64,000 bases of DNA, from positions 1 through 64,000 of IMG/VR virus record IMGVR_UViG_3300048927_000250; one strand, written 5' to 3'. The notes under the pieces are model-generated. The model saw only the letters and a program-made list of their open reading frames with translations, was not told the DNA's origin and made no database searches. Positions 4,279-55,965 of the stretch are shown piece by piece (positions within the stretch are counted from its first letter, which is position 1; the number at the start of each line of letters is the position of its first letter). The translations under genes and the position numbers were made by a program.

Positions 4279-5157
4279 ATGGCCATCAAACTCGATTGGA
4301 AAGACCTCTCGCTTAAAGGTTACACCGGGGTAAACATTTACCGTAATGCCGGTAAGTTCGACATGAGTCAGGCGTTACCTGCTCCACTGGTGGCGAACCT
4401 GGCGGCGAACACCGTTACGTATACCGACACCACCGCTGTGAAGAACACATCGTACAGCTACCTCATTGCCGGGGTAAAGGACGGTAAGGTTACTGGTGGT
4501 GTACCGTTCACAGCGGGGAACTACAACGACACCGGACCAGGCCCCACTACCTTAGCCCGAGGTGATTGGTTCTGTGGGTACTTCGGTGAGGTGAGCAGTG
4601 CTGACCTCTTTACCACCGGCGACATCAAAACCCAAATCCCGACTACCGCCGGGATGACTCTGAATACCATCAGCACCTGGTACAAGTTCATCTATAACGG
4701 GAAAATAATCTTCACCCCGGGAATTTCTATCGGTACGGTATCCTGGTTTGCCGTCTATGCCGCTGGACTAATCTACGGTACCGACGACAACGGAAATGTA
4801 CCTTCAGGCGCTAACCCTAACCCCACACCTAAAAATCAGATGGCAAGGATGACAAAAGGTGGGTGGAGTTTTATCTTCAGAGCGCCAAAAGGGGTTGCTG
4901 CCGCAGTTAACTCCCAGGTCGCCCTCTGGGCGAATACCGAAGTACTGGAGATATTTGACCGAATGTATCTCAACAACCCTGGTACTTACGGTAAGGGGAG
5001 GTTCCTCGACCTACCGGTTGTCGCAGGAATTTATACCAACAACTGGTTTGCGAATAACGTGGTCGCAATAATGGCACCGCCATCAGGACTAACCAGCAAC
5101 GTACCAACCACGGCATTCAACAACTGGGTACCGGTGCTGGAGCTTGAATTCCTCTGA
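4279..5157 (+). CDS. Virion structural paralog, type B2
   Basis: FN3-like N-domain, DTGPGP..L.RGDW..GYFG core, ends WVPVLELEFL. Confidence 0.7.
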   Translation: MAIKLDWKDLSLKGYTGVNIYRNAGKFDMSQALPAPLVANLAANTVTYTDTTAVKNTSYSYLIAGVKDGKVTGGVPFTAGNYNDTGPGPTTLARGDWFCGYFGEVSSADLFTTGDIKTQIPTTAGMTLNTISTWYKFIYNGKIIFTPGISIGTVSWFAVYAAGLIYGTDDNGNVPSGANPNPTPKNQMARMTKGGWSFIFRAPKGVAAAVNSQVALWANTEVLEIFDRMYLNNPGTYGKGRFLDLPVVAGIYTNNWFANNVVAIMAPPSGLTSNVPTTAFNNWVPVLELEFL

Positions 5158-13485: not shown

Positions 13486-14061
13486 TTACTTTCCTTCGGT
13501 CAGTTGACTTATCATGATTTCCCTGATAACCCGACGAACCACCTTGAGGAATTCCAAAAACACCTCTTGGTCGAGCAGTGGGTTTTCAACGATTGTTTGG
13601 TATCCCCCGTCGGTGAACGTGCCAACGAGAGTGCCGAGTGTTCCGTAATCACCGGGAACAAAGACGGCAAAACCATCTCCACCATCTGGCGTAACGTAAT
13701 AGACGGCGATGTACACCGCGCCCGCCGTAAACACACGAACAATTGTCGCGTTTAATGATGTCAGGTAGTCTGGACGTATATCTACCTTCCCCTGAAACTC
13801 ACTTAAGTTCTTCTTCAGAATGTCGCGAGCAGTGAACGGGGAGATGAGCGCATGGCGAAGGTCATCTCGCCACGGGCTTACCCAGTTCAGGATTCCGGAC
13901 AACAACGTGTGCGAGTTGCGACCACGATGACCGCAATGCCTGCAACGTATCCGGAACTCACCTTGTTTGTACGAACCCAGGATTTGCAAGTTGGTCGAAT
14001 TGCAGTCCGGGCACGGCGTTAAGGTGAATTGACTAGGCGCTACTTTACGTCGAATTAACAT
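13486..14061 (-). CDS. Lar (restriction alleviation)-like Zn-binding domain fused to an unknown C-terminal domain
   Basis: LTPCPDC....RIRCRHCGHRG.......ILNW fits the Lar_restr_allev pattern. Confidence 0.55.
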   Translation of the reverse strand: MLIRRKVAPSQFTLTPCPDCNSTNLQILGSYKQGEFRIRCRHCGHRGRNSHTLLSGILNWVSPWRDDLRHALISPFTARDILKKNLSEFQGKVDIRPDYLTSLNATIVRVFTAGAVYIAVYYVTPDGGDGFAVFVPGDYGTLGTLVGTFTDGGYQTIVENPLLDQEVFLEFLKVVRRVIREIMISQLTEGK

Positions 14062-14162: not shown

Positions 14163-14333
14163 TTAGATTTTGCAGGCACCACCCTCGCATTCATCGTCGC
14201 CAGGTTTGTACTCAACTTCCGGCGGACGGTCAGCTACTGCATCTGCATGGGCAGCCGCTTGCTCCAGGACCTCGTCCGGGAGGTTAAACTCACCGTCAAA
14301 CAAATCGTCATCTTTTTTGGCAGGTGTAGACAT
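14163..14333 (-). CDS. Unannotated 56-aa acidic microprotein ending in an NrdA-like CxxxxC redox tail
   Basis: Manual translation MSTPAKKDDDLFDGEFNLPDEVLEQAAAHADAVADRPPEVEYKPGDDECEGGACKI; E. coli NrdA ends DDGCESGACKI. Confidence 0.8.
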   Translation of the reverse strand: MSTPAKKDDDLFDGEFNLPDEVLEQAAAHADAVADRPPEVEYKPGDDECEGGACKI

Positions 14334-14399
14334 AAGCCTTTTCTCTTCTGTGGTTATTCATCTAATAACAGGTCGACGTAAAAAAGGAATGAAATTTAA

Positions 14400-15044: not shown

Positions 15045-15419
15045 ATGCCCCAGTACTCATTGCCAAATCCATCTATCACCTTCCTTTACGATAAGGAAAT
15101 GGTGCGCCTCAACGACACCTACGCCACACCGGAAATGATTGTACCAGCCGACTTCGAGTCAGATGGTAACAGCGCTCCTTGGTTTGCACGGGTCGTCTTC
15201 CCACGCTTTGGCCGTGACCTGCCTGCGTGTATTGTGCATGACTATTGCTACGGTGGCGCAATGCCGCGCAAGCAAGCGGACAAACTGCTCAAAAAGAACA
15301 TGAAGCGCTTAGGCTTCAAATGGTGGAAGTACCAGGTGATGTACTGGTCGGTTCGCATCGGCGGCCACTCCCACTATCAGCGTCGCCAAGTCGAGACCGG
15401 AAGAATGGCGGCCGTTTGA
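15045..15419 (+). CDS. DUF1353-family protein
   Basis: VPADFESDGxSxP....HDYxY...RKxAD....M..LG......MY..VR.GG pattern. Confidence 0.8.
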   Translation: MPQYSLPNPSITFLYDKEMVRLNDTYATPEMIVPADFESDGNSAPWFARVVFPRFGRDLPACIVHDYCYGGAMPRKQADKLLKKNMKRLGFKWWKYQVMYWSVRIGGHSHYQRRQVETGRMAAV

Positions 15420-16020: not shown

Positions 16021-16332
16021 TTATGCTTTCTTGCTACGGTCCAGATAGGCTTTGATGCCCCAACACTTGTTGCGTGCCTTCATGAACGCGCCACGGATAC
16101 CGTCAGCATCAGTGTACATCGCATCATTCCGGGGACGAGCGTCGTCGGTTTCACTGTGCCCGTTATCCAGCGTCAGCGTACAACTGATGAGGGTAGTACC
16201 TGGCCAACGGAAGAACGCAGCCTGCTTAATCAACGTGTCCACATCGAAGTGAATCAGGTCGGGATAAGCGGCAAAGACGTGTTCTACATTGACTGGGGTA
16301 CCGTCGAGAGGGATGTTCATCTTCTGTTCCAT
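16021..16332 (-). CDS. Phage Gp49/Sf6 gp66-family-like protein
   Basis: GTTLxxCxLTLxNG.S.......G...A..KA.NK.W....YL pattern. Confidence 0.6.
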   Translation of the reverse strand: MEQKMNIPLDGTPVNVEHVFAAYPDLIHFDVDTLIKQAAFFRWPGTTLISCTLTLDNGHSETDDARPRNDAMYTDADGIRGAFMKARNKCWGIKAYLDRSKKA

Positions 16333-22686: not shown

Positions 22687-23793
22687 TTATTTGGACACTG
22701 GGTAAGGGATGTGGGCGTGCGATTCGTAGCCTTCCAGAATGAAGTCTTCGAATTTGAAGAACGCCGGGTCAGTCACGTCGCGACCTTTGGTGTCGATACG
22801 CAACGTCGGTAACTTCATTGGGGTACGGCTCAGCTGGGTTTTGGTCAGCTCCATCTGGTTAGCGTAGATGTGCGCATCACCCAGCGAGTGTACGAAGTCA
22901 CCTGGAATCATGTTCAGAATGTGCGAGAACATGTGAATCAACAGCGCGTAGCCCGCAATGTTAAACGGTACGCCCAGCGGAATGTCCGCGCTGCGCTGAT
23001 ACAACTGGCAACTGAGACGGTACTTCGGCACTTTCGCTTCGTCCAGTTCTTTGATGAACTGCGCTTCATGACGCAGAACGTGCTGTGACAGGTAGTGACG
23101 GTCCACGTACGTCAGACGCTCCCAGGTGGTCAGCTCATCGGCGTAGAACTGGAAGAAGGCATGACACGGTGCCAGTGCCATACGGCCCTCCATGACGTTC
23201 TCCTCAACGCTGTGGTCTTCCCAGGGTAATGACTCCGGGTTCCACGTTGAGATGCACATACGGCGGCTCATGGGGTCTTTGCGCAATGAGGCCAGTACTG
23301 TTTTCACCTGGTCAATCGGACCGAATGCCGCTGGCCAGGCACGCATCTGTTTACCGTACATCGGACCGATTTCACCTTCCTGGATGTACATGTAGTCATT
23401 GACGTCCAGCTCGGCTTTTGTGAACCAATCCAGGATGTCATTCCACGACCAGTCATCAAATCCCGGCGGACAAGTGATGGATGTCCCCATCTGCGCCGCC
23501 ACCCAGTTGATATTCTCCCCAACTTCGACCATCTCTTTCGTGGCCGCCCATTCGTTCCAGATAGTGACCCCTTCTTTGGTCAACTCTCGGTTGTCCGTGG
23601 AACCCTGCATGAACCAGAGCATCTCGTGAATGATGCTACGCAAGTGAACTTTCTTGGTGGTGACTAGCGGAAACCCGTCCGCGAGGTTAAAACGCATTTG
23701 GTGACCAAAGATGCCATACGTTCCGCCGTTACGGCCTTCACGATAACGCCCTTCCTTTACTGTTTTCGCCATCAAATCTAAATACTGTTGCAT
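22687..23793 (-). CDS. thyA: Thymidylate synthase with two insertions
   Basis: GFPLVTTKKVH, LAPCH, LYQRSAD..LGVPFN, GDAHIY. Start MQQYLDL chosen from a GGGA SD; the ORF extends to 23853. Confidence 0.97.
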   Translation of the reverse strand: MQQYLDLMAKTVKEGRYREGRNGGTYGIFGHQMRFNLADGFPLVTTKKVHLRSIIHEMLWFMQGSTDNRELTKEGVTIWNEWAATKEMVEVGENINWVAAQMGTSITCPPGFDDWSWNDILDWFTKAELDVNDYMYIQEGEIGPMYGKQMRAWPAAFGPIDQVKTVLASLRKDPMSRRMCISTWNPESLPWEDHSVEENVMEGRMALAPCHAFFQFYADELTTWERLTYVDRHYLSQHVLRHEAQFIKELDEAKVPKYRLSCQLYQRSADIPLGVPFNIAGYALLIHMFSHILNMIPGDFVHSLGDAHIYANQMELTKTQLSRTPMKLPTLRIDTKGRDVTDPAFFKFEDFILEGYESHAHIPYPVSK

Positions 23794-23901
23794 GTGCAAG
23801 TGTCCCGTCTGTGTGTAAAAGAAATTTCTCATAAGGCAACCTGATGTCGTCAAAAAAGAACGTGTTTCACTAATTCCTTACCCACTGATTAGAATGATAA
23901 A

Positions 23902-29932: not shown

Positions 29933-31270
29933 TTATTGGATAACGTAATTTTTGAGGATGAATGTGCAAGCAGGGTGAGTGATGCGGACGAACTTGGTGT
30001 CGGTGTAGAACAGGTTCATGTTTGCACGACGGTTGAACAACTGACCCACTTCATGGTTCCAGTCCTGGAAGCGTTCGACCGTGATTTTCACCAGAGTGGA
30101 ATCTCCGCCAGAACCGTCGATGAATTCCAGTGCCCACTTGATGACTGCCTCCAGTTGGTCTTCGCGCAGTTCTTCCGCAACGAAATCCATACCGTTGTGT
30201 AAGTCAATGGCCACCTGAAGGTTGGCCATGATGATATCCATGTTGGCCGCCATCTCTTCTTTGGTGAAGACGCCTTCCTTCTTGAAGATACGCGGGCGCG
30301 CTTCATTCATACGCTCACCGAAAGTTTTCTCTTTATCGACCAGTGTCGTAACCAGCGGTTGCTCACTGTGGACGTGAACCGATTTACCATCGGTAACCAT
30401 GGTGCCGCGCATTACTTCCTGACCTGCACCACTGGAACCAAAACCACCTGCGCCGCGTTCAGTTTCCGTACTGAACTCATTCACCTGTTTGAACAGACCC
30501 ATTACCACCGGTTGAATCAGGTACTGGGCAATACGGTCACCACGAGAGATTTTGAACGCCGCTCCCTGAGTGTTACGGTTCCACAGAGAGACCATCAGTT
30601 GCCCGTTGTAGTCGGCATCAATGACACCCGTGAGGTTACCCAGTACGATACCGTGTTTGTGACCCAGACCAGAACGCGGATGAATCAGACCCACGTAGTT
30701 CGGGTTCTTCAGGAAGAACGCCAGCCCGGTTGGAATCAGTTTGGTTTCACCCGGTTCCAGGAAGGTGTCTTCCGTAACGGCAGCCATCAGGTCAACCCCG
30801 GCTGCGTCTTCAGAACCACGTGGAGCGAACTCTTTACCCCAATACAGTTCTTCGTCGAGTACCTTTACTTCGACCTGAATGCAGTTACGGTCGTAGGCGA
30901 CTGGCGGCGGAAGTTTAGCCAGCGTTTCTTCTGTCAGCATTGTCTGACGGTGAGTGATAAACGCGCGCACCATGCCCAATGGGAAGGAGAATTTGTAGAA
31001 CGGAGTGGAGTCCCCTTCTTCATGGACATCGAAGGTCGTGTCCATCAGGACGAACTTACCATGTCCTGCGTCCGGTCCTGTTTCTGCTGAATACACGACG
31101 TTGAAACCAAAGTCGGTAAAGAATGAAGTTATGTGTTTAACATACGCCTCTTCCTCCGCTGCCGATACTTCGAAAGGTGTATCCGGGTGAGGGAAGTTCT
31201 GATGTATCGCGTGCAGTGTTCCCCATACGGCGTCGATGACACCGCGTACAGCATTAATTTTCTCAGACAT
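29933..31270 (-). CDS. dut: Trimeric-type dUTPase with long N- and C-terminal extensions
   Basis: All five motifs: GVDL, IPTG, PRSG, GVIDADY.G, GDRIAQ/RGxGGFGSSG. Confidence 0.92.
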   Translation of the reverse strand: MSEKINAVRGVIDAVWGTLHAIHQNFPHPDTPFEVSAAEEEAYVKHITSFFTDFGFNVVYSAETGPDAGHGKFVLMDTTFDVHEEGDSTPFYKFSFPLGMVRAFITHRQTMLTEETLAKLPPPVAYDRNCIQVEVKVLDEELYWGKEFAPRGSEDAAGVDLMAAVTEDTFLEPGETKLIPTGLAFFLKNPNYVGLIHPRSGLGHKHGIVLGNLTGVIDADYNGQLMVSLWNRNTQGAAFKISRGDRIAQYLIQPVVMGLFKQVNEFSTETERGAGGFGSSGAGQEVMRGTMVTDGKSVHVHSEQPLVTTLVDKEKTFGERMNEARPRIFKKEGVFTKEEMAANMDIIMANLQVAIDLHNGMDFVAEELREDQLEAVIKWALEFIDGSGGDSTLVKITVERFQDWNHEVGQLFNRRANMNLFYTDTKFVRITHPACTFILKNYVIQ

Positions 31271-49270: not shown

Positions 49271-49311
49271 CTTATGGAGTCCCCATGTGAGTTCAGTTGA
49301 GGGAAAGTTTT

Positions 49312-52300
49312 ATGGCTGGTAAAAAACAAAAGGTCGATATCGACGACTACGGTATGGATTTCGACTTTGATGATGATTGGGATGACGGTGAAACAACGTT
49401 CAACCCATCCGGAAGTAGTAGTAACGGTAGCCGTAACCCCGTACTGAATTCCGGTAAAACTGTATTGAAGTCAATGGGGGAAACCGCACTGACTCCGGCA
49501 TTTGTGCGCGACACCCTTAAGGTGGCACTGCCGAAAGAGTTCTCGACCACGCTCGATAACTTAGACCGCTACTCTGGCGATTTCCGCAAGATGCAGCAGG
49601 ACATCAGTACGGAACTGCGCCCAACGCTTAACTCGTTTAAGCAGATGACCCGCACAGTTAACCGTCTGATTCCTAACCCGTTCCAGGACAAGATTGAGAA
49701 GCTGCTGGCTAACAAGGACACCGGGCCCGATTTAGGGAAAGTGGACCTGGAGCAAGCAGCTGTCGATTCACAGCTGGGTGAAGTCTTTGCTCAGCAGCAG
49801 CAACAGGACCGTAATCAGGAGCGGGCGGAGAAAGTCATCGACCGCATGTCGCAAGAAGACTTCCGGTCAAAAATCTTCGATGCGGTCAGTGCAATCCGTA
49901 ACGCCACGGTGCAGAGTAACAGCTACCAGATGTCGGTCCAGCGTGCTTACCAACGCAAGTCACTGGAAATCCGAATCCGTCAACTGGTCGCCACTCGCGG
50001 TATCCTTGACGTTACCCGCAAGAGCGCCGAGGAAAGTTCCCAGCTCTTACGTGATATCGTGAAGAACACCGGTCTCCCAGAGTTTGCCAAAGAAGAAGCG
50101 TCGGAACACTTCCACCGCTTAGCGCGCCAGCGTCTCTTTGGTGCTGCTCAGGAGAACATCGGCGAGTTCATGCGTAACTACATGAGCAAGGTCGGTAAAG
50201 GCTACGCTGACATGGCCAAGGAGAAGATGCAGCAGTTCCGCGGCTTCTTCGACAGCGGTCGTCAGATGGCTGACGATATTGAGATGCAGGCGCAGCAAAT
50301 GCGTGACATGGGGATGGACCCCAAAGAGATGGCCCTGGAACTGTTCGGGCAGTCTCTCATGCAACGCGTGGGTACCAGAGCAGGGGCCTGGGTTGGTAAA
50401 CGTTTACCTTACCGTCAGGGTGCCTCTAACCTCTTTGGTTACGCGAACGAGTTTGCAACGAACTTGCCTGCGAACATGCGGAACCTCGCCCGTAAGCAAC
50501 AGTACGGTGGTTTCCTGCACAGCGCACTCAAACCGTTCGACCAGTCGTATAACGACGGGGGTGTGGTCCGTACCGGTGGTCTATCCGGTTTGACCGGTAA
50601 CAATGACATGGAGATGCGTAAAGTCCGTGCCCTGGAAGAAATCATTCCTGGGTACCTCTCCCGCATCCTACATAGCATTGACATCATGCGAACGGGCAAT
50701 GAGAACTTGCCGCGCACGGTGTACAGCGGTCAGAAGGGCGCTTTCGTCCAATTCGATGAAGCGGTGAAACTGGTGCGAAAATCTGCACTGAATGACACCG
50801 ACATCGAAGACCAGCAAGGGTACGTCAAACAGCTCGTTGACCAGATTGACCCGACCGGGAAGTTGCGGGGTAAAGACCGCGATGTACTGGAACGTCACCT
50901 GATGAAAGAGATGCACGGCGTTAACCGTTGGGACCCGGAAGCAATTGCTAATAAAGGTGTCGATGGTGTAACAGGCCGTGGGAACCGTTTGTTGTCTATC
51001 CTGATGAAAGACCGCTACGGTCTCCAGCACGATGCAGCAACTGGGAAGTACTCCGCCCACCTGTGGAAATCCCGTAACGACTTGCGCGACCAAGACTCCC
51101 AAATCTTCAAGCGGGGGCAGGACCGGGTTAAAGCGTTACGTCCTTCTATTACCGGGATTACTAACTCGGGTGACATGGAAGCGGCGATTGCTGAAGGTCT
51201 GGTTATCTGGGACGGTTCCAACTGGGTCATGAACACCAAGTATTACGACGAGCGTTCTGCTGACCTGTTAGCGAACAAACGCCAACGAGTACGCATCGAC
51301 CCCCATAACCCCGCAGCGGGGGCGAATGGGTTCTCCTCCGGTCTGGGTGGTGGCCCTACTCCACCGCCGCCTGCTGCCGGTGGGTTCGGTGGGATGTTCG
51401 ACCGCTTTAAGGGACACGAGGAAAAAGAAGGGAACATCAGTAACCGAAATGGTCGCGGTATCATTAAAGCGATTCGTGACCAGACCGATGAACTGATGAC
51501 CTTCCTCGAACCGAAAGGGCACACTGACCACGAGATGTACCAGCACATGATTGATGCCATTGATGAAGTGGCGGAAATCCTCGAGCAGGGTGTCACCTTG
51601 AACGGAACCGGGGGTGCTTCAACAGGGGGTGCCGGTGAACGGAAGAAGTCCCTGATTCGTCGGGCGCTCTCTCGTGCACGTAAAGGCGGAACCTGGGCTG
51701 GGAAGAAAATCTGGGACATCAGCGGGTACCCGATGCGGGCACTGAACTGGGCCAGGAAGAAGATACCGGGTCGGAAGATGTTCAACTGGGGCAGTGAGAA
51801 GCTGAAGAACTTCGGTTCCAAGGTAGATGCACTGCGCAGCGATGTTTACGTCATGGGCGTCAATGGGTTCCGTCGGGCGCTGGATATGGCCGGGTTCGCA
51901 GAAGGTCGTTACCGTGACATGAAGACCGGGAAACCGATTTTCAACATCAAGGATATCACCGGAGCGGTGTACGACACCATCTTAGGGAAACAGGTCCTGA
52001 GTGAAGAAGAGTTCCAGGGTGGGCTGCTGAACTCGCTGGGCAAGAAAATCAAAGACGGTGTCATCGGTCGAGTGAAGAACGCGGGTAGTCGCGTCATGGG
52101 TTGGGTAACGAACCCGGTGACCAGCATGTGGGCGAACATCAAGAAGGGGATGCAGGGGGCGAAAGAGTTCCTGATGGCTCCTCCGGATATCTACGTGTTG
52201 GGTGAAACCACCCCTCGTTGTAAAGGTGATTTGTTCTACCGTGGCTTCTACTATTCCGGTGTAACCGGGAAACCGTTGAAGACCCTCGGGGACATTGATG

Positions 52301-55300
52301 GCGATATCATCACTTTCGACAACATCTCGGGCGAACGTAAGGTGGTCATCTCCAAAGATGAAATCGAACGGGGCCTGTACGACTCACGTGGCAACAAACT
52401 GACTTCGCTCTTGACCAAGTTCAAGAATGCAGCCGGTTGGGCGCGTGATAAAGTCAAAGGGTTGTGGAACGCACCGAAGCGTCTGCTGGATTGGGCGAAG
52501 AACGGCATCAAGGGTATCGGTACCGGGCTGGGTAAATTGCTGGGCGGAACGAAACCGGAGATTGGTCAGACCTACTGGCTGAAGCGCATCTTCCACCTCC
52601 TCTACAACAAGTTCTCAGGGAAGCCGTTAGGTGAAGGCCTGAGTGAGGCGTTGAAGGAAACCGGGAACAAGGTGGGTGAAGCGGCGTCCCGACTGAAAGA
52701 CGAAGCCGTGGCCAAAGGACGGAAATGGTGGAAGTTCGGTCGGAGCAAGTACGACGAGGCCAAAGGGTCGGTTGCTGCGCAGAAAGCCGCAGAGTACCGT
52801 GACCAGTTGAAGGAGCGTTCGGGTTCCTGGCTCAACCGTCAAATCGAAGCAGGAAAGAATAAGTACCACGCTTACCAGGCAGGGAAACCCCTGGGCGATA
52901 AGAAAGAAGGTATCTTCGGGTTACTGAAGAATGGCTTCGGACTCATCGGTGGCGTGCTGATGGGAATCAAGCAGGGCTTCGGGACCTTTGCCGGGAAACT
53001 CTTTGGGTGGTTACCAAAACTCCTGATGGCAAAACGTGGTGCTGACCTGGCAGGTGACATTGCGGATGTGGCCTCTGGTGCAGGCGGACGTGGTCGTGGC
53101 GGTTTGTTACGTCGTGGTGCACGTGCGTTAGGTAAAGGGGCATGGTGGGCTGCGAAAGGCTTGACGGTTGGCGGTGGCGGGATGTTACTGCGCGGTGGGA
53201 TGGCACTCGCTTCCATGGCGGGTGGTCTGCTGTCTGCGCCGGTTGTCCTGGGCCTGGCTGTTGCGGGGGGTGCTGCTTACCTTATCTACAAAGGGTGGAA
53301 GGCCTACTCTGAACGTCTCGACCTGATGCAGCGTATGCGTCTGGCACAGTACGGTGCAGACCTGGGGAACAAAGAGCAGTGCGGTAAAATCCTCGCCTTC
53401 GAGGAAACAGTACTCTCCAAGTATACCCGGACTGACGGTAACGGTGGTGTAACATTGCAACCAATGCCGTTTGGTGAATTGATGCAGGCCTTCGGGGTTA
53501 ACCCGTCTGCACGCTTCACCGTTCACAACTGGGCCAACTGGTTTGACCGTCGCTTTAAACCGGTCTTCATCAAGAACGTGTCGGAACTGTACAAAGTGAG
53601 CCCGAAAGGAAACCTCGCGAAGTCAGGGAGCTACGACAACGGCTTGAAACCACAACTGGCGAAGGCCACGAAGATTGAGGCACCGGCGAGTCAATCGCCG
53701 TACTACGTGCAGCAGTCGCCGTTCCCGAACCAGACCAGTCGTACAGGTACCGCCATGGTTGATGCAACTATCGCGGCAGTGGTCGAAGAATACGGTAAGG
53801 ACGAGAAGACCTACCGTGGTCGTCAGGAAGTGCAGGAGCAGCAGAAAGGGAAAGTGGCAGTCGATGCCAACGGGAACTATCTGGCTGCAACGACCGTTGA
53901 CCCGGATGCGAAAGTCATCAAAGGACAGAAGCTCACTTACCAGGCCGGACCAAACAACCGTATCCTGGACCAAATGGGTGGGTTGGGTGACCGTTCGACC
54001 ATGGCACGCATTACTGGTGACCAAGCGACGGACGATGCGTTGTTGAAGAACAACCGCATTGATGACCTGACCTCTATCCGACTCAAGGTGTACGGCTTAA
54101 CCAGCCTCGACCGTATTTACGTCGATACCCTGATGCAGTTCGAACGGGACATGTATCAGAACGTCACTGTCGCTAATAACGGCGTGGCGTCTTTCAACGG
54201 CAATGCGGACGACGTGTACAACAAGTACTGTGCGAAGTTCAGTTTGGGCTTTGGTGATACCGATGCTCGTATTACGTGGACGACGTGGTTCCAGAACCGC
54301 TTCCTCCCGGCGTTCCTGAACTTTGTGGCGCAGACCAAGAAGATTAACCCGAACCAGGACGTCTTCACCGCGTGGCAGTCGTACAAAGCGGCTGACCTGC
54401 TGAAGATTGCCAACTTCGTTTCCGATGCCCGTGCAACGGTTAACGGCCAACGCATTAGCGTGTGGGCAGTTAAGGTGTCTCCATTCCCTGGAGAAACCGC
54501 AGGAACGGACGGAACGGTTATCCAGAAGAACCTGGAAGTCTTCAAGCAAGCGCAAGAGAAAGAACAGTACCAAGAGTCGGAAGCCGCAGCACGAGCTATT
54601 CGTGAGAAGTACACGGGCGTAAAAGTCAATGCACTCTCCGATAAAGGTCGTGTTGAGCTAACCAGTCGGGTGAACAACCTGATGGCGGACATGGCGAAAG
54701 CCACAGGGAACACATCAGGGTACCAAGGGATTCCGACTGGGGGTGCGTACGGTACCTCGTTTGAGTCCGCAGGGACCGGCGGGATGTACGGGTCCGGTAA
54801 TGTGCCGAAGGTGAAACTCTCGGGTTCAGCCAAACAGCACGCGGACACGGCAATGAAGTTTGCACAGGCGAACGGGATTGCCGGAGAAGAGTTGGCGTTG
54901 TTCATGGGAACGCTCGCACACGAGTCCGGTAACTTCTCTGCAACACTGGAGAAAGGGTCGGGCGCGAGGTACGAGAACAACAAGAACCTCGGGAACACTC
55001 AACCTGGCGACGGGGAGCGGTTTAAAGGTCGTGGTTGGATTCAGTTGACCGGGCGTAACAACTACGCACACTACGGGAAACTGACCGGTCTCGACTTGTT
55101 GAATCACCCTGAGCTGGCAGAGATTCCAGAGAACGCCAACAAACTGGCAGTGGCCTACTGGCAAGACCGAGTCATTCCGATGATTCGACAGAAGCGTGCG
55201 AAGTTCGATGTTCTGAGCGTAGCACGTGCGGTGAACGGTTGGTTTGAAGACCGGATGCCGAACGGAATGGATGACCGTATTCTGAAGACTAACCAGTGGC

Positions 55301-55965
55301 GACAGATTCTGAATGGCGGTGGTGACATCCCACTGTCTGACCGTGGAGCTTCCGAGAACCCGGGTGGACAGGTACAGGCAGGTGGTGGACAGGAAACGAC
55401 CCCACCGTTGTCACAAGCTGCTAAAGCAGCAAACCCATACGACTCAATTGCCAATTCAGTCACTTCTCCGAAAGGAGGAGCCGCTACCGGACAGGAAACT
55501 GTACCGTCTATCGCGAATGCTGCAACCGACCCAATTCCTACGGGAAGCGGACGCGGTCTACAGAACCTGAAAGGAATGAGTGCCTCTAACCCAACGATGC
55601 AACCGCAAGCCAACCCATCGGCTGAGGTCGTTGACCACAAACGTCTGCAAGTGGCGCGTAGTGTGATTGAAAATAATCAAGTACGTCAAACGCAGCAGGC
55701 GGTAACCGAACAGGCGAAAGCCACTGGCTCGGCTGTGGAATGGTTAGAGAAATCGTATGGCGTGCAGAACGACTCCCTGACCCAACTGAAACAGTTGGTG
55801 AAAATCATCTCCGAAGGCGGCCTCTTTGGCGCTGCGAACGAGAAGAAAGGGGAATCGAAGAATCCGTCCACCGCAGAACGCACCATGAACGATATCCCGA
55901 TTAAGTCGGGGTTAGGTCAGAATGGTAGCGGTGCCCTGCCGTTCAGTACAAAACGCGGCGGTTAA
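49312..55965 (+). CDS. Tape-measure-like tail protein with C-terminal GH19 (chitinase/lysozyme-class) domain (phiKZ gp181 position)
   Basis: About 2.2 kaa, helical/Gly-rich. LAHESG, Y.N..NLGN..GDG.RFKGRG.IQLTGR.NY and NG..NG..DR at about 54890-55310. Confidence 0.85.
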   Translation: MAGKKQKVDIDDYGMDFDFDDDWDDGETTFNPSGSSSNGSRNPVLNSGKTVLKSMGETALTPAFVRDTLKVALPKEFSTTLDNLDRYSGDFRKMQQDISTELRPTLNSFKQMTRTVNRLIPNPFQDKIEKLLANKDTGPDLGKVDLEQAAVDSQLGEVFAQQQQQDRNQERAEKVIDRMSQEDFRSKIFDAVSAIRNATVQSNSYQMSVQRAYQRKSLEIRIRQLVATRGILDVTRKSAEESSQLLRDIVKNTGLPEFAKEEASEHFHRLARQRLFGAAQENIGEFMRNYMSKVGKGYADMAKEKMQQFRGFFDSGRQMADDIEMQAQQMRDMGMDPKEMALELFGQSLMQRVGTRAGAWVGKRLPYRQGASNLFGYANEFATNLPANMRNLARKQQYGGFLHSALKPFDQSYNDGGVVRTGGLSGLTGNNDMEMRKVRALEEIIPGYLSRILHSIDIMRTGNENLPRTVYSGQKGAFVQFDEAVKLVRKSALNDTDIEDQQGYVKQLVDQIDPTGKLRGKDRDVLERHLMKEMHGVNRWDPEAIANKGVDGVTGRGNRLLSILMKDRYGLQHDAATGKYSAHLWKSRNDLRDQDSQIFKRGQDRVKALRPSITGITNSGDMEAAIAEGLVIWDGSNWVMNTKYYDERSADLLANKRQRVRIDPHNPAAGANGFSSGLGGGPTPPPPAAGGFGGMFDRFKGHEEKEGNISNRNGRGIIKAIRDQTDELMTFLEPKGHTDHEMYQHMIDAIDEVAEILEQGVTLNGTGGASTGGAGERKKSLIRRALSRARKGGTWAGKKIWDISGYPMRALNWARKKIPGRKMFNWGSEKLKNFGSKVDALRSDVYVMGVNGFRRALDMAGFAEGRYRDMKTGKPIFNIKDITGAVYDTILGKQVLSEEEFQGGLLNSLGKKIKDGVIGRVKNAGSRVMGWVTNPVTSMWANIKKGMQGAKEFLMAPPDIYVLGETTPRCKGDLFYRGFYYSGVTGKPLKTLGDIDGDIITFDNISGERKVVISKDEIERGLYDSRGNKLTSLLTKFKNAAGWARDKVKGLWNAPKRLLDWAKNGIKGIGTGLGKLLGGTKPEIGQTYWLKRIFHLLYNKFSGKPLGEGLSEALKETGNKVGEAASRLKDEAVAKGRKWWKFGRSKYDEAKGSVAAQKAAEYRDQLKERSGSWLNRQIEAGKNKYHAYQAGKPLGDKKEGIFGLLKNGFGLIGGVLMGIKQGFGTFAGKLFGWLPKLLMAKRGADLAGDIADVASGAGGRGRGGLLRRGARALGKGAWWAAKGLTVGGGGMLLRGGMALASMAGGLLSAPVVLGLAVAGGAAYLIYKGWKAYSERLDLMQRMRLAQYGADLGNKEQCGKILAFEETVLSKYTRTDGNGGVTLQPMPFGELMQAFGVNPSARFTVHNWANWFDRRFKPVFIKNVSELYKVSPKGNLAKSGSYDNGLKPQLAKATKIEAPASQSPYYVQQSPFPNQTSRTGTAMVDATIAAVVEEYGKDEKTYRGRQEVQEQQKGKVAVDANGNYLAATTVDPDAKVIKGQKLTYQAGPNNRILDQMGGLGDRSTMARITGDQATDDALLKNNRIDDLTSIRLKVYGLTSLDRIYVDTLMQFERDMYQNVTVANNGVASFNGNADDVYNKYCAKFSLGFGDTDARITWTTWFQNRFLPAFLNFVAQTKKINPNQDVFTAWQSYKAADLLKIANFVSDARATVNGQRISVWAVKVSPFPGETAGTDGTVIQKNLEVFKQAQEKEQYQESEAAARAIREKYTGVKVNALSDKGRVELTSRVNNLMADMAKATGNTSGYQGIPTGGAYGTSFESAGTGGMYGSGNVPKVKLSGSAKQHADTAMKFAQANGIAGEELALFMGTLAHESGNFSATLEKGSGARYENNKNLGNTQPGDGERFKGRGWIQLTGRNNYAHYGKLTGLDLLNHPELAEIPENANKLAVAYWQDRVIPMIRQKRAKFDVLSVARAVNGWFEDRMPNGMDDRILKTNQWRQILNGGGDIPLSDRGASENPGGQVQAGGGQETTPPLSQAAKAANPYDSIANSVTSPKGGAATGQETVPSIANAATDPIPTGSGRGLQNLKGMSASNPTMQPQANPSAEVVDHKRLQVARSVIENNQVRQTQQAVTEQAKATGSAVEWLEKSYGVQNDSLTQLKQLVKIISEGGLFGAANEKKGESKNPSTAERTMNDIPIKSGLGQNGSGALPFSTKRGG

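What the first reader, a model, noticed from the sequence alone, without database searches (positions are those of the whole stretch)
14163..14333. Free-standing ribonucleotide-reductase redox tail: a 56-aa microprotein mimicking the NrdA C-terminus
Seen: an ORF below the 60-aa track cutoff translates to MSTPAKKDDDLFDGEFNLPDEVLEQAAAHADAVADRPPEVEYKPGDDECEGGACKI. Established: E. coli class Ia NrdA ends DDGCESGACKI, and its Cys754/Cys759 shuttle electrons from thioredoxin/glutaredoxin to the active-site disulfide. Nine of the last 11 residues are identical, at the very C-terminus after an acidic flexible linker. No nrdA body lies upstream; the neighbour is an unrelated hydrolase. Inference: this is a trans-acting redox arm. 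It could speed re-reduction of host or phage RNR, complement a tail-less phage NrdA encoded elsewhere, or act as a decoy for Trx/Grx. More weakly, its DDDLFDGEFNL segment resembles the NrdB C-terminal alpha-docking peptide (DTDDLSNFQL), which would give it a docking site. I do not know of a described system like this.
Basis: partly seen in the sequence, partly recalled or inferred. Interest (0 to 1): 0.88.

Follow-up and report, generated by a model that had tools for sequence, protein, structure and literature searches.

The report
Free-standing mimic of RNR tails
A jumbo phage that has no ribonucleotide reductase of its own encodes a conserved 56-residue disordered protein whose end copies the cysteine 'redox tail' of the host enzyme's large subunit; in close relatives the start copies the docking tail of the small subunit, so it probably acts on the host's DNA-precursor enzyme in a way not yet described.

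Summary
Window 14163-14333 (-) is a real 56-aa gene under purifying selection (dN/dS 0.04-0.12). Its last 11 residues match E. coli NrdA in 9 positions, in register with the stop codon, and homology to genuine NrdA tails runs about 20 residues. The window is an Erwinia Chimalliviridae phage close to PhiEaH1. PhiEaH1 and Klebsiella phage KpLz-2_45, which carries an orthologue, have no detectable RNR, thioredoxin or glutaredoxin, so a tail for a tail-less phage NrdA is excluded. The gene belongs to an unnamed family of about 40 distinct proteins. Most are 40-62 aa and acidic, and all end in Cys-x(3-4)-Cys-Lys-Ile/Leu. Members occur in many phage types and in bacteria; in Neisseriaceae the gene lies between iscS and iscU. 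In several subfamilies the N-terminus matches NrdB C-terminal docking peptides (p<=0.003); in the window protein that match is marginal (p=0.045). Best reading (confidence about 0.4): a thioredoxin/glutaredoxin-rechargeable dithiol arm that docks on host NrdA. The main rival is a two-site RNR inhibitor. No function was tested, and no publication or curated family was found.

The parts
14163..14333 (-). 56-codon gene plus stop for the tail-mimic microprotein (orthologue of PhiEaH1 gp098, YP_009010151)
   Evidence: ORF listing and translation. Annotated as a hypothetical protein in PhiEaH1 and vB_Ea277G. dN/dS is 0.04-0.12 against metagenomic orthologues. The ORF is 100% nucleotide-identical to PhiEaH1 while the 2.1-kb surroundings are 97.8% identical.
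14166..14225 (-). Residues 37-56 (PPEVE...DDECEGGACKI): the segment homologous to the flexible C-terminal redox tail of class Ia NrdA
   Evidence: 9 of 11 residues match E. coli NrdA. The PEVE-acidic-CExGACKI arrangement is shared with Oleispira and Pseudoalteromonas NrdA tails, and the EVVE-type tails of Proteus-type NrdA match the orthologues. P38, E39, E41, D47 and C49-I56 are invariant across the three Chimalliviridae genera.
14187..14189 (-). Cys49 codon, the counterpart of E. coli NrdA Cys754
   Evidence: Invariant in all family members found, including the divergent fusion proteins.
14172..14174 (-). Cys54 codon, the counterpart of E. coli NrdA Cys759
   Evidence: Invariant in all family members found. 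Spacing to the first Cys is 4 residues, or 3 in some fusion proteins.
14232..14276 (-). Residues 20-34: the only predicted secondary structure, an amphipathic helix or linker
   Evidence: AlphaFold2 on the family alignment gives helix 20-34 with the rest coil, mean pLDDT 63.
14280..14312 (-). Residues 8-18 (DDDLFDGEFNL): acidic/aromatic N-terminal motif, a candidate NrdB-C-terminus-like docking motif
   Evidence: D8, L11, F16 and L18 are invariant in A1. On the NrdB C-terminus matrix the window protein scores 7.3 bits (p=0.045), its Klebsiella-phage orthologues 12.8 bits (p=0.003), and other subfamilies up to 23.6 bits.
14337..14345 (-). Purine-rich tract (GAGAAAAGG) just upstream of the ATG, a likely ribosome-binding site
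   Evidence: Read directly from the sequence. Not tested further.

Best explanation
The gene encodes a small, acidic, mostly disordered protein built from copies of the two flexible tails that run class Ia ribonucleotide reductase (RNR). Its last ~20 residues are a free copy of the NrdA C-terminal tail, whose two cysteines normally carry electrons from thioredoxin or glutaredoxin to the active-site disulfide. Its N-terminal acidic/aromatic motif resembles the NrdB C-terminal peptide that docks in a cleft on NrdA. The phage has no RNR, thioredoxin or glutaredoxin, so the partners must be host proteins. Proposed mechanism: the N-terminal motif docks the peptide on host NrdA, the tethered dithiol exchanges with the active-site cysteines, and host thioredoxin or glutaredoxin recharges it. 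The peptide would then act as an extra redox arm in trans and alter host dNTP output during infection. More generally, the Cys-x4-Cys-Lys-Ile end looks like a portable, rechargeable dithiol arm that different N-terminal parts deliver to different clients. Shown: the gene is real, conserved and selected; the tail is homologous to NrdA tails; the phage lacks RNR; both cysteines are invariant; and some subfamilies carry an NrdB-like motif. Inferred: binding to NrdA, redox cycling, and above all the sign of the effect (boost or block).
For: The tail matches NrdA over about 20 residues and sits at the C-terminus. Both cysteines and the K-I/L end are invariant in about 40 distinct family proteins, even where the residues between them and their spacing drift (CGDGCKI, CDSGGCKI, CGDACKI). 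That points to conserved dithiol chemistry rather than shape alone. Two cysteines allow full turnover, whereas a single cysteine would suffice for a covalent trap. N-terminal motifs score like real NrdB C-termini in several subfamilies against composition-matched shuffles and whole phage proteomes. The motif flavour follows the clade: F-D-L in marine peptides and marine NrdB, F-N-L in the window protein against F-Q-L in Tatumella, Pectobacterium and E. coli NrdB. PhiEaH1 and KpLz-2_45 lack RNR, Trx and Grx but keep thyA, dut, tmk, and (KpLz) tdk and DHFR, so they depend on host ribonucleotide reduction or on salvage. The peptide is predicted to be disordered with one helix, as expected for a tail. 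It is under purifying selection. The free NrdA tail peptide appears as its own chain in a solved complex (1qfn_B). In trapped E. coli RNR the beta tail was seen on only one alpha, and in the B. subtilis enzyme thioredoxin binds the side that is not doing radical transfer; if E. coli behaves likewise, a docking cleft could be free during re-reduction (PMC11903788). Elsewhere the family member lies near nucleotide genes: dCMP deaminase in pEa_SNUABM_7, and PolA and ThyX in L020.
Against: No binding, redox or activity data exist. The NrdB-like motif in the window protein is only marginally significant (p=0.045), has a two-residue insertion, and is internal rather than C-terminal. Several subfamilies lack it altogether. 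Docking in the beta-tail cleft would be expected to compete with NrdB and so inhibit the enzyme, not help it. The host NrdA already has a tethered tail at high local concentration, so the benefit of a free one is unclear. The Neisseriaceae copy lies in the isc operon, not near nrd genes, and Neisseria NrdA keeps its own tail. The other bacterial copies lie beside flavin reductases or unrelated genes. No conserved partner gene flanks the phage copies. The Erwinia amylovora NrdA and NrdB tails were not retrieved.
Confidence: 0.4

Rival explanations
1. Two-site inhibitor of host class Ia RNR. The N-terminal motif occupies the NrdB-tail cleft on NrdA and blocks holoenzyme formation, while the C-terminal tail competes with NrdA's own tail for the active site or for the redoxin. 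The result would be a shut-off of host dNTP synthesis, analogous to the small disordered RNR inhibitors of yeasts. The phage would then live on nucleotides salvaged from host DNA.
For: The beta C-terminus is what tethers beta2 to alpha (PMC11903788), and competition by beta-tail peptides is a classical way to inhibit RNR (established knowledge). NrdB-like motifs occur in several subfamilies. The phages carry salvage and dTMP enzymes (thyA, dut, tmk, tdk, DHFR) but no RNR, which fits reliance on recycled deoxynucleotides. The Neisseria copy is presumably co-expressed with the isc operon, so it could throttle the iron-dependent RNR when Fe-S supply is low.
Against: An RNR-less phage with a 218-kb genome would be expected to need host RNR. 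Strict invariance of both cysteines across the family is not required for a steric plug. The motif is weak in the window protein and absent in some subfamilies.
Confidence: 0.25
2. The target is the redoxin rather than RNR. The free tail is a substrate mimic that engages host thioredoxin or glutaredoxin, either to draw reducing power to another client or to occupy the redoxin. The N-terminal part selects the client. In Neisseria the client could be part of the ISC machinery, and in fusion proteins it could be the attached domain.
For: The isolated NrdA tail peptide is present as its own chain in a solved complex (1qfn_B; that the partner is glutaredoxin-1 is from memory). The same tail is fused to unrelated domains: Phage_gp49_66 in phage Pylas, an unknown 220-aa fold in P0014, and others. 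Bacterial copies sit in the isc operon or next to flavin reductases rather than nrd genes. A Gp49_66-like gene lies 1.7 kb from the window gene.
Against: A reduced dithiol peptide does not sequester reduced redoxins, and no oxidising client has been identified. This reading does not explain the NrdB-like motifs. The fusion partners gave no functional clue.
Confidence: 0.15
3. The protein is unrelated to RNR function. It could be a metal- or Fe-S-binding acidic peptide, or a ribosomal natural-product precursor with an acidic leader carrying an F-x-L-D-like box and a Cys-containing core. In that case the likeness to NrdA is convergent.
For: One UniRef entry labels a Neisseria member 'FxLD family lantipeptide'. 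The Neisseria gene sits between iscS and iscU. The architecture, an acidic N-part plus a C-terminal Cys pair, superficially resembles precursor peptides and acidic iron-binding ISC partners.
Against: NCBIfam does not reproduce the lantipeptide label. The G-variant core has no Ser or Thr for lanthionine formation, and no modifying enzyme genes lie nearby in phages or Neisseria. About 20 residues of similarity to NrdA tails, in register with the C-terminus, together with the G/S alternation also seen in real NrdA tails, is too specific for convergence.
Confidence: 0.07
4. The ORF is a decaying remnant of a lost nrdA gene, or a chance ORF that is not expressed.
For: It is short, below usual annotation cut-offs, and no expression data were available.
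Against: No nrdA fragments occur anywhere in the genome. Orthologues of similar length are found in three Chimalliviridae genera, with conserved synteny within the PhiEaH1 group. dN/dS is 0.04-0.12. About 40 distinct family members occur in unrelated phages and bacteria.
Confidence: 0.02

Closest known systems
C-terminal redox tail of class Ia RNR large subunit (NrdA; Cys754/Cys759 in E. coli)
   Same: About 20 residues are alike, including the acidic run, C-E-[GS]-G-A-C-K-I and the position at the C-terminus. The peptides show the same G/S alternation as genuine NrdA tails. The segment is predicted to be flexible.
   Different: The peptide is not attached to any RNR body. It is encoded alone in genomes without RNR and has an extra N-terminal motif and helix.
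C-terminal alpha-docking peptide of class Ia RNR small subunit (NrdB), and the synthetic beta-tail peptides used as RNR inhibitors
   Same: The acidic/aromatic motif D-[DS]-[FL]-x-[DSN]-F-x-L is found in several peptide subfamilies, with scores in the range of real NrdB ends.
   Different: In the peptides the motif is N-terminal and internal, not at a free C-terminus. It is weak in the window protein and missing in some subfamilies. Binding is untested.
Small intrinsically disordered RNR regulators of eukaryotes (Sml1, Hug1, Dif1, Spd1)
   Same: They are short, disordered proteins acting on RNR subunits. Sml1 is reported to interfere with the large subunit's C-terminal tail function, and Hug1 binds the small subunit (PMC4245953 title and abstract; the Sml1 mechanism is from memory).
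   Different: There is no sequence relation. Those proteins do not copy the tails, are not known to be redox-active, and occur in eukaryotes. No bacterial or phage counterpart was found in the literature searched.
Free NrdA tail peptide in complex with a redoxin (PDB 1qfn) and the engineered E. coli alpha-beta tail fusion (PDB 8vhu)
   Same: These laboratory constructs show that an isolated tail peptide can be a specific ligand, and that joining alpha-tail and beta-tail segments in one chain is workable.
   Different: They are artificial. The natural peptides have the opposite order (beta-like motif first, alpha tail last) and lack the enzyme body.

Membership tests
Class Ia RNR large subunit (NrdA) | Ten-stranded catalytic barrel with the active-site cysteines (Pfam Ribonuc_red_lgC/lgN) and an ATP-cone | tested here: not met
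   The 56-aa protein has no Pfam match. tblastn with NrdA aligns only the last 11 residues. No RNR domain is found elsewhere in the genome.
Class Ia RNR large subunit (NrdA) | Flexible C-terminal tail ending C-x4-C-K-I after an acidic run | tested here: met
   9 of 11 residues are identical to E. coli, and about 20 residues resemble 87 distinct genuine tails.
NrdB C-terminal alpha-docking peptide | Acidic/aromatic octapeptide of the type DD[LF]x[DNG]F[DEQ]L | tested here: inconclusive
   The window protein scores 7.3 bits, p=0.045 against shuffles, and 36 hits at or above this score occur in 168,000 residues of six-frame PhiEaH1 ORFs. The orthologues score 12.8 bits (p=0.003), and other subfamilies 18.8-23.6 bits.
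NrdB C-terminal alpha-docking peptide | Located at the free C-terminus of the chain and binds the cleft on NrdA | tested here: not met
   The motif lies at residues 8-18 of 56, followed by P-D-E. Binding itself is not testable with these tools.
Thioredoxin/glutaredoxin substrates | A dithiol/disulfide pair reduced by Trx or Grx | not testable with these tools
   Only the sequence identity with a known substrate tail and the invariance of both cysteines are shown.
Lanthipeptide / RiPP precursor (FxLD family label in UniRef) | Match to the curated precursor model; Ser/Thr plus Cys in the core; modifying enzymes encoded nearby | tested here: not met
   No NCBIfam hit at E<=1 for seven family members, including the labelled Neisseria protein. 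The G-variant core has no Ser or Thr. The neighbours are isc genes or phage genes of unknown function.
Sml1/Hug1/Spd1-type disordered RNR regulators | Sequence homology to those families | tested here: not met
   No Pfam family matches. The exhaustive profile search returned only the peptide family itself.

The most novel reading that the evidence does not exclude
A previously unrecognised class of microproteins in phages and bacteria acts as free, portable redox arms. Each is a copy of the NrdA tail, recharged by thioredoxin or glutaredoxin and aimed at a client by a short docking motif. In phages that motif copies the NrdB tail, so that an RNR-less virus can plug directly into the host's ribonucleotide reductase and reprogramme dNTP supply. 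In Neisseriaceae the same module serves or gauges Fe-S cluster assembly.
Probability: 0.3. Interest if true: 0.9.

Novelty: categorically new. Interest (0 to 1): 0.8.

Why it matters
RNR is the only de novo source of DNA precursors and has been studied for sixty years. Its two flexible tails are known as the parts that hold the subunits together and reset the active site. A natural stand-alone protein made of copies of those tails has not been described. If it binds NrdA, it would be the first phage- or bacterium-encoded protein effector of class Ia RNR. It would show how RNR-less jumbo phages control host dNTP supply. It would also give a natural probe for the poorly resolved re-reduction half-cycle and a natural lead for peptide-type RNR modulators. 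Its presence in Neisseriaceae, including N. meningitidis, between iscS and iscU hints at an unknown link between Fe-S assembly and thiol-based electron delivery or DNA-precursor synthesis. All of this can be tested directly with the well-established E. coli K-12 enzyme system.

Tried and rejected
- Relic of a fragmented nrdA: rejected, because no RNR fragments occur in the window or in the whole PhiEaH1 genome.
- Split tail for a tail-less phage NrdA: rejected for PhiEaH1 and KpLz-2_45, which have no RNR at all.
- Conserved operon partner: the immediate neighbours are not shared between the Erwinia and Klebsiella phages. Only a DHH phosphoesterase and a DUF7740 ORF a few kb away are shared.
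- The G versus S position of the tail tracks the host: rejected, because Erwinia amylovora phages carry both variants.
- Function from fusion partners: P0014-type N-domains have no Pfam or PHROG function, and the AlphaFold model (pTM 0.62) has no significant Foldseek match in PDB or BFVD. Phage_gp49_66 itself has no known function.
- Prophage origin of the Neisseria copies: rejected. They lie in the chromosomal isc operon, and the IMG/VR 'provirus' L038 is that same operon.
- Lantipeptide label: not reproduced.
- Terminator after the gene: the hairpin is not significant, z=-1.4.
- Literature searches for the tail strings and for phage or bacterial RNR-binding small proteins found nothing relevant.
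- The FBKp24 and PaBG papers do not mention RNR, and no supplements were held.
- A phage-wide NrdA tblastn was capped at 5000 records and could not address the Erwinia phages.

Full report
**What is there**

Window 14163-14333 (minus strand) holds a 56-codon ORF with a purine-rich tract before its ATG.

The window is 100% identical to an IMG/VR viral contig of 215 kb (L015). It is 97.8% identical to Erwinia amylovora phages PhiEaH1 and vB_Ea277G, where the ORF is annotated as a hypothetical protein. PhiEaH1 encodes a nuclear-shell protein, PhuZ tubulin and split RNA polymerases. Its genus, Iapetusvirus, is classified in Chimalliviridae.

**Is the resemblance real?**

- E. coli K-12 NrdA ends ...SIQDDGCESGACKI and NrdB ends ...DTDDLSNFQL. 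The ORF's last 11 residues match NrdA in 9 positions, in register with the stop codon.
- The back-translated tail plus stop occurs once in the window and in none of 100 shuffles, even with two mismatches allowed.
- It is the only ORF in PhiEaH1 or KpLz-2_45 that ends C-x(3-4)-C-K-[IL].
- I compared it with 87 distinct genuine NrdA tails recovered from bacterial and viral loci. The likeness extends to about 20 residues. The window's PPEVE-x5-DDECEGGACKI parallels APEVEDDGCEGGACKI and TPEVEDDDCEGGACKI (Oleispira, Pseudoalteromonas). The orthologue tail GEVVEASDECEGGACKI parallels EEVVESADSDCEGGACKI (Proteus and Providencia type).
- CEGGACKI is itself a natural NrdA ending in many Gammaproteobacteria: 103 of 120 bacterial hits were true NrdA ends.

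**Is it a gene?**

- Full-length orthologues exist in Klebsiella and Serratia Chimalliviridae of about 300 kb (Siatvirus KpLz-2_45; Maaswegvirus FBKp24; Centimanus). They share an invariant C-terminus, a conserved P-E-x-E block and a conserved N-terminal D-x2-L-x4-F-x-L motif.
- Metagenomic orthologues keep the local synteny and give dN/dS of 0.04-0.12. The two neighbouring genes give 0.07-0.15.
- The ORF is nucleotide-identical to PhiEaH1 although the surrounding 2.1 kb carries 47 differences. About 3.8 differences would be expected in 171 nt, so finding none has P about 0.02.
- AlphaFold2 on the family alignment predicts a disordered chain with one helix at residues 20-34 and mean pLDDT 63.

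**Not a relic, and not a part of a phage RNR**

- tblastn with E. coli NrdA, NrdB, NrdE, NrdF, NrdD, NrdG, NrdH, NrdI, TrxA and GrxA against the complete PhiEaH1 and KpLz-2_45 genomes gave no hit at E<=0.05.
- Their annotations list thyA, dut and tmk (plus tdk and DHFR in KpLz) but no nrd genes.
- Nine large unannotated PhiEaH1 proteins have no Pfam domain at all.
- The idea that the peptide supplies a tail to a tail-less phage NrdA is therefore excluded for these lineages.

**The family is much wider than the profile search shows**

A profile search of 1.84 billion representatives found 16 clusters. Most are 44-62 aa, and two are fusion proteins of 259 and 296 aa. No NrdA appeared among them.

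A DNA-pattern scan gave a different view:

| Scan | Loci | True NrdA ends | Free-standing or fused |
|---|---|---|---|
| CEGGACKI-stop in IMG/VR | 32 | 2 | about 26 free acidic peptides of 40-62 aa; the rest carry the tail on other domains |
| CESGACKI-stop in IMG/VR | 29 | 20 | 9 free peptides, from Erwinia and Dickeya jumbo phages of about 265 kb and from smaller contigs |

- One fusion partner is a Phage_gp49_66 domain in the N4-like Klebsiella phage Pylas. Its close relative KpCHEMY26 lacks both the tail and any RNR.
- Close homologues differ only at the G/S position (L028 versus L184). Erwinia phages carry both variants, so that residue does not track the host.
- Across about 40 distinct proteins, both cysteines and the final K-I/L are invariant. 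This holds even in the fusion family, where the intervening residues and spacing drift.
- None of the free peptides has an RNR gene in its fetched flanks.

**The N-terminal motif**

I collected 67 distinct NrdB C-termini from the same loci and built a position matrix from their last eight residues (42 distinct octamers). I then scanned the N-terminal parts of 39 distinct family proteins.

| Peptide group | Motif | Score (bits) | p vs shuffles |
|---|---|---|---|
| L032 | SDFDDFDL | 23.6 | <=0.0005 |
| L029 | LDFDDFEL | 18.8 | <=0.0005 |
| Klebsiella-phage orthologues | LDFDSFTL | 12.8 | 0.003 |
| pEa_SNUABM_7 | – | 12.6 | 0.0025 |
| Window protein | – | 7.3 | 0.045 |

- Real NrdB ends have a median score of 20.9.
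- Against whole phage proteomes, scores of 12 or more occur 2 times in 168,000 residues and 8 times in 176,000 residues.
- The window protein scores low partly because of a two-residue insertion.
- Several subfamilies have no such motif.
- The motif flavour parallels clade-specific NrdB ends: F-D-L in marine types, and F-Q-L in Tatumella, Pectobacterium and E. coli types against F-N-L in the window.
- An alternative reading is that the motif corresponds to the Q-x-D-[LI] element of NrdA's own tail. I cannot exclude this.

**Bacterial copies**

- The same module occurs as a 42-aa gene in many Neisseria species and in Eikenella. It is always between iscS and iscU, about 70 nt upstream of iscU.
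- It is seen on at least 1000 contigs and is called hypothetical everywhere. One automatic 'FxLD lantipeptide' label is not reproduced by NCBIfam.
- Chain 7mdi_A, which from memory is N. gonorrhoeae NrdA, ends QDDGCAGGACKI. The Neisseria peptide is therefore an extra free tail, not a replacement.
- Copies in Thalassolituus and Moraxella lie next to a CysJ-like diflavin reductase and an OYE flavin oxidoreductase. A copy in a Neisseria MAG lies between valyl-tRNA synthetase and an aldehyde dehydrogenase.

**How it most likely works**

Established knowledge, restated in PMC11903788:

- The beta C-terminus tethers beta2 to a cleft on alpha.
- The alpha tail cysteines re-reduce the active site and are themselves reduced by thioredoxins.
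- In trapped E. coli RNR, beta-tail density was seen on one side only.
- In the B. subtilis class Ib enzyme, thioredoxin binds the side that is not performing radical transfer.

The isolated NrdA tail peptide also appears as its own chain in a solved complex (1qfn_B).

From this I infer that the phage peptide docks on host NrdA and offers a second, free dithiol arm that host redoxins can recharge. Two points favour redox chemistry over mere shape: both cysteines are invariant while the residues between them drift, and two cysteines allow turnover where one would suffice for a trap.

The sign of the effect is open. Docking in the beta cleft should compete with NrdB, so a bivalent inhibitor is the main rival. 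The fusions and the isc-operon copies suggest the tail is a portable arm that can serve clients other than RNR.

My confidences are:

- 0.40: RNR-directed redox arm
- 0.25: RNR inhibitor
- 0.15: redoxin-directed, or serving another client
- 0.07: unrelated metal-binding peptide or RiPP precursor
- 0.02: relic or non-gene

**Comparison with what is known, and novelty**

- The protein is not a member of the NrdA or NrdB families, because it lacks their bodies. It copies their tails.
- The nearest functional analogues are the small disordered RNR regulators of yeasts and the synthetic beta-tail peptide inhibitors. Neither is related in sequence, and neither is redox-active.
- No Pfam or NCBIfam family covers the peptides. 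Only two PHROGs of unknown function touch the tail weakly.
- Full-text searches found no description.
- I rate it categorically new as a kind of element. The caveat is that the function is inferred from sequence alone.

**Limits**

- No complex modelling was possible with the single-chain tool.
- RNR absence was verified in only two complete peptide-bearing genomes, plus one relative of a third.
- No expression data were available.
- The organism of PDB 7mdi, the partner in 1qfn and the Sml1 mechanism rest on my memory.

Noticed in passing
L131:4277-4405 (-), and L066, L069, L094, L095, L104, L123, L136, L156, L157, L038: Neisseria species and Eikenella carry a 42-aa free NrdA-tail peptide gene inside the isc operon, between iscS and iscU. 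It is seen on at least 1000 contigs and is annotated hypothetical everywhere. Neisseria NrdA (7mdi_A) keeps its own tail, which ends CAGGACKI.
   Followed up: partly
window 16021-16332 (-); L053:1193-1582: A weak Phage_gp49_66 (N4 Gp49 / Sf6 gp66) protein lies 1.7 kb from the peptide gene (24.7 bits; cut-off 27). In Klebsiella phage Pylas a Gp49_66 domain is fused directly to the same Cys tail, which may be a Rosetta-stone link. The relative KpCHEMY26 lacks the tail.
   Followed up: partly
L132:1972-1998 region; L140:375-401 region: The free tail peptides in Thalassolituus and Moraxella caprae lie next to a CysJ-like diflavin reductase and an OYE-type NADH:flavin oxidoreductase, respectively. 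Both are redox contexts without nrd genes.
   Followed up: partly
window 22687-23853 (-) and 29933-31270 (-): The thymidylate synthase (388 aa, with the profile spread over residues 21-386) and the dUTPase (444 aa, with the domain only at 148-280) are unusually long. They carry insertions or an N-terminal extension of unknown role.
   Followed up: no
window 15045-15419 (+): A DUF1353 protein on the opposite strand is labelled 'tail assembly chaperone' in RefSeq PhiEaH1. It sits in a block of small non-structural genes and is syntenic in all close relatives.
   Followed up: no
window 13486-14061 (-): The downstream neighbour (191 aa) has an N-terminal four-cysteine zinc-ribbon-like segment (weak Pfam zinc-ribbon hits; phrog_1474). 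It is conserved next to the peptide gene in the PhiEaH1 group only.
   Followed up: no
L057:39163-45756 (KpLz-2_45 tail-fibre protein; window homologue 49297-55965 +): The 2197-aa tail-fibre protein has DRFDDFDL at residues 10-17, which scores 18 bits on the NrdB C-terminus matrix. This is probably chance, but it was the top proteome hit.
   Followed up: no
PDB entries 8vhu, 8vhp-8vhr, 1qfn: The PDB holds an engineered E. coli fusion of the alpha and beta subunits and the free 25-residue NrdA tail peptide. These are useful reagents and precedents for testing the natural peptides.
   Followed up: no
cluster 2: The 90%-identity protein collection places the window peptide in a cluster whose other members are 478-aa helicase-like proteins. 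This is evidently a clustering artefact that would hide the peptide from cluster-based surveys.
   Followed up: no
L018:5995-6141: The marine-type peptide gives a weak hit (E=0.11) to the extreme C-terminus of the class II RNR model TIGR02505. This hints that the tail likeness is not limited to class Ia.
   Followed up: no
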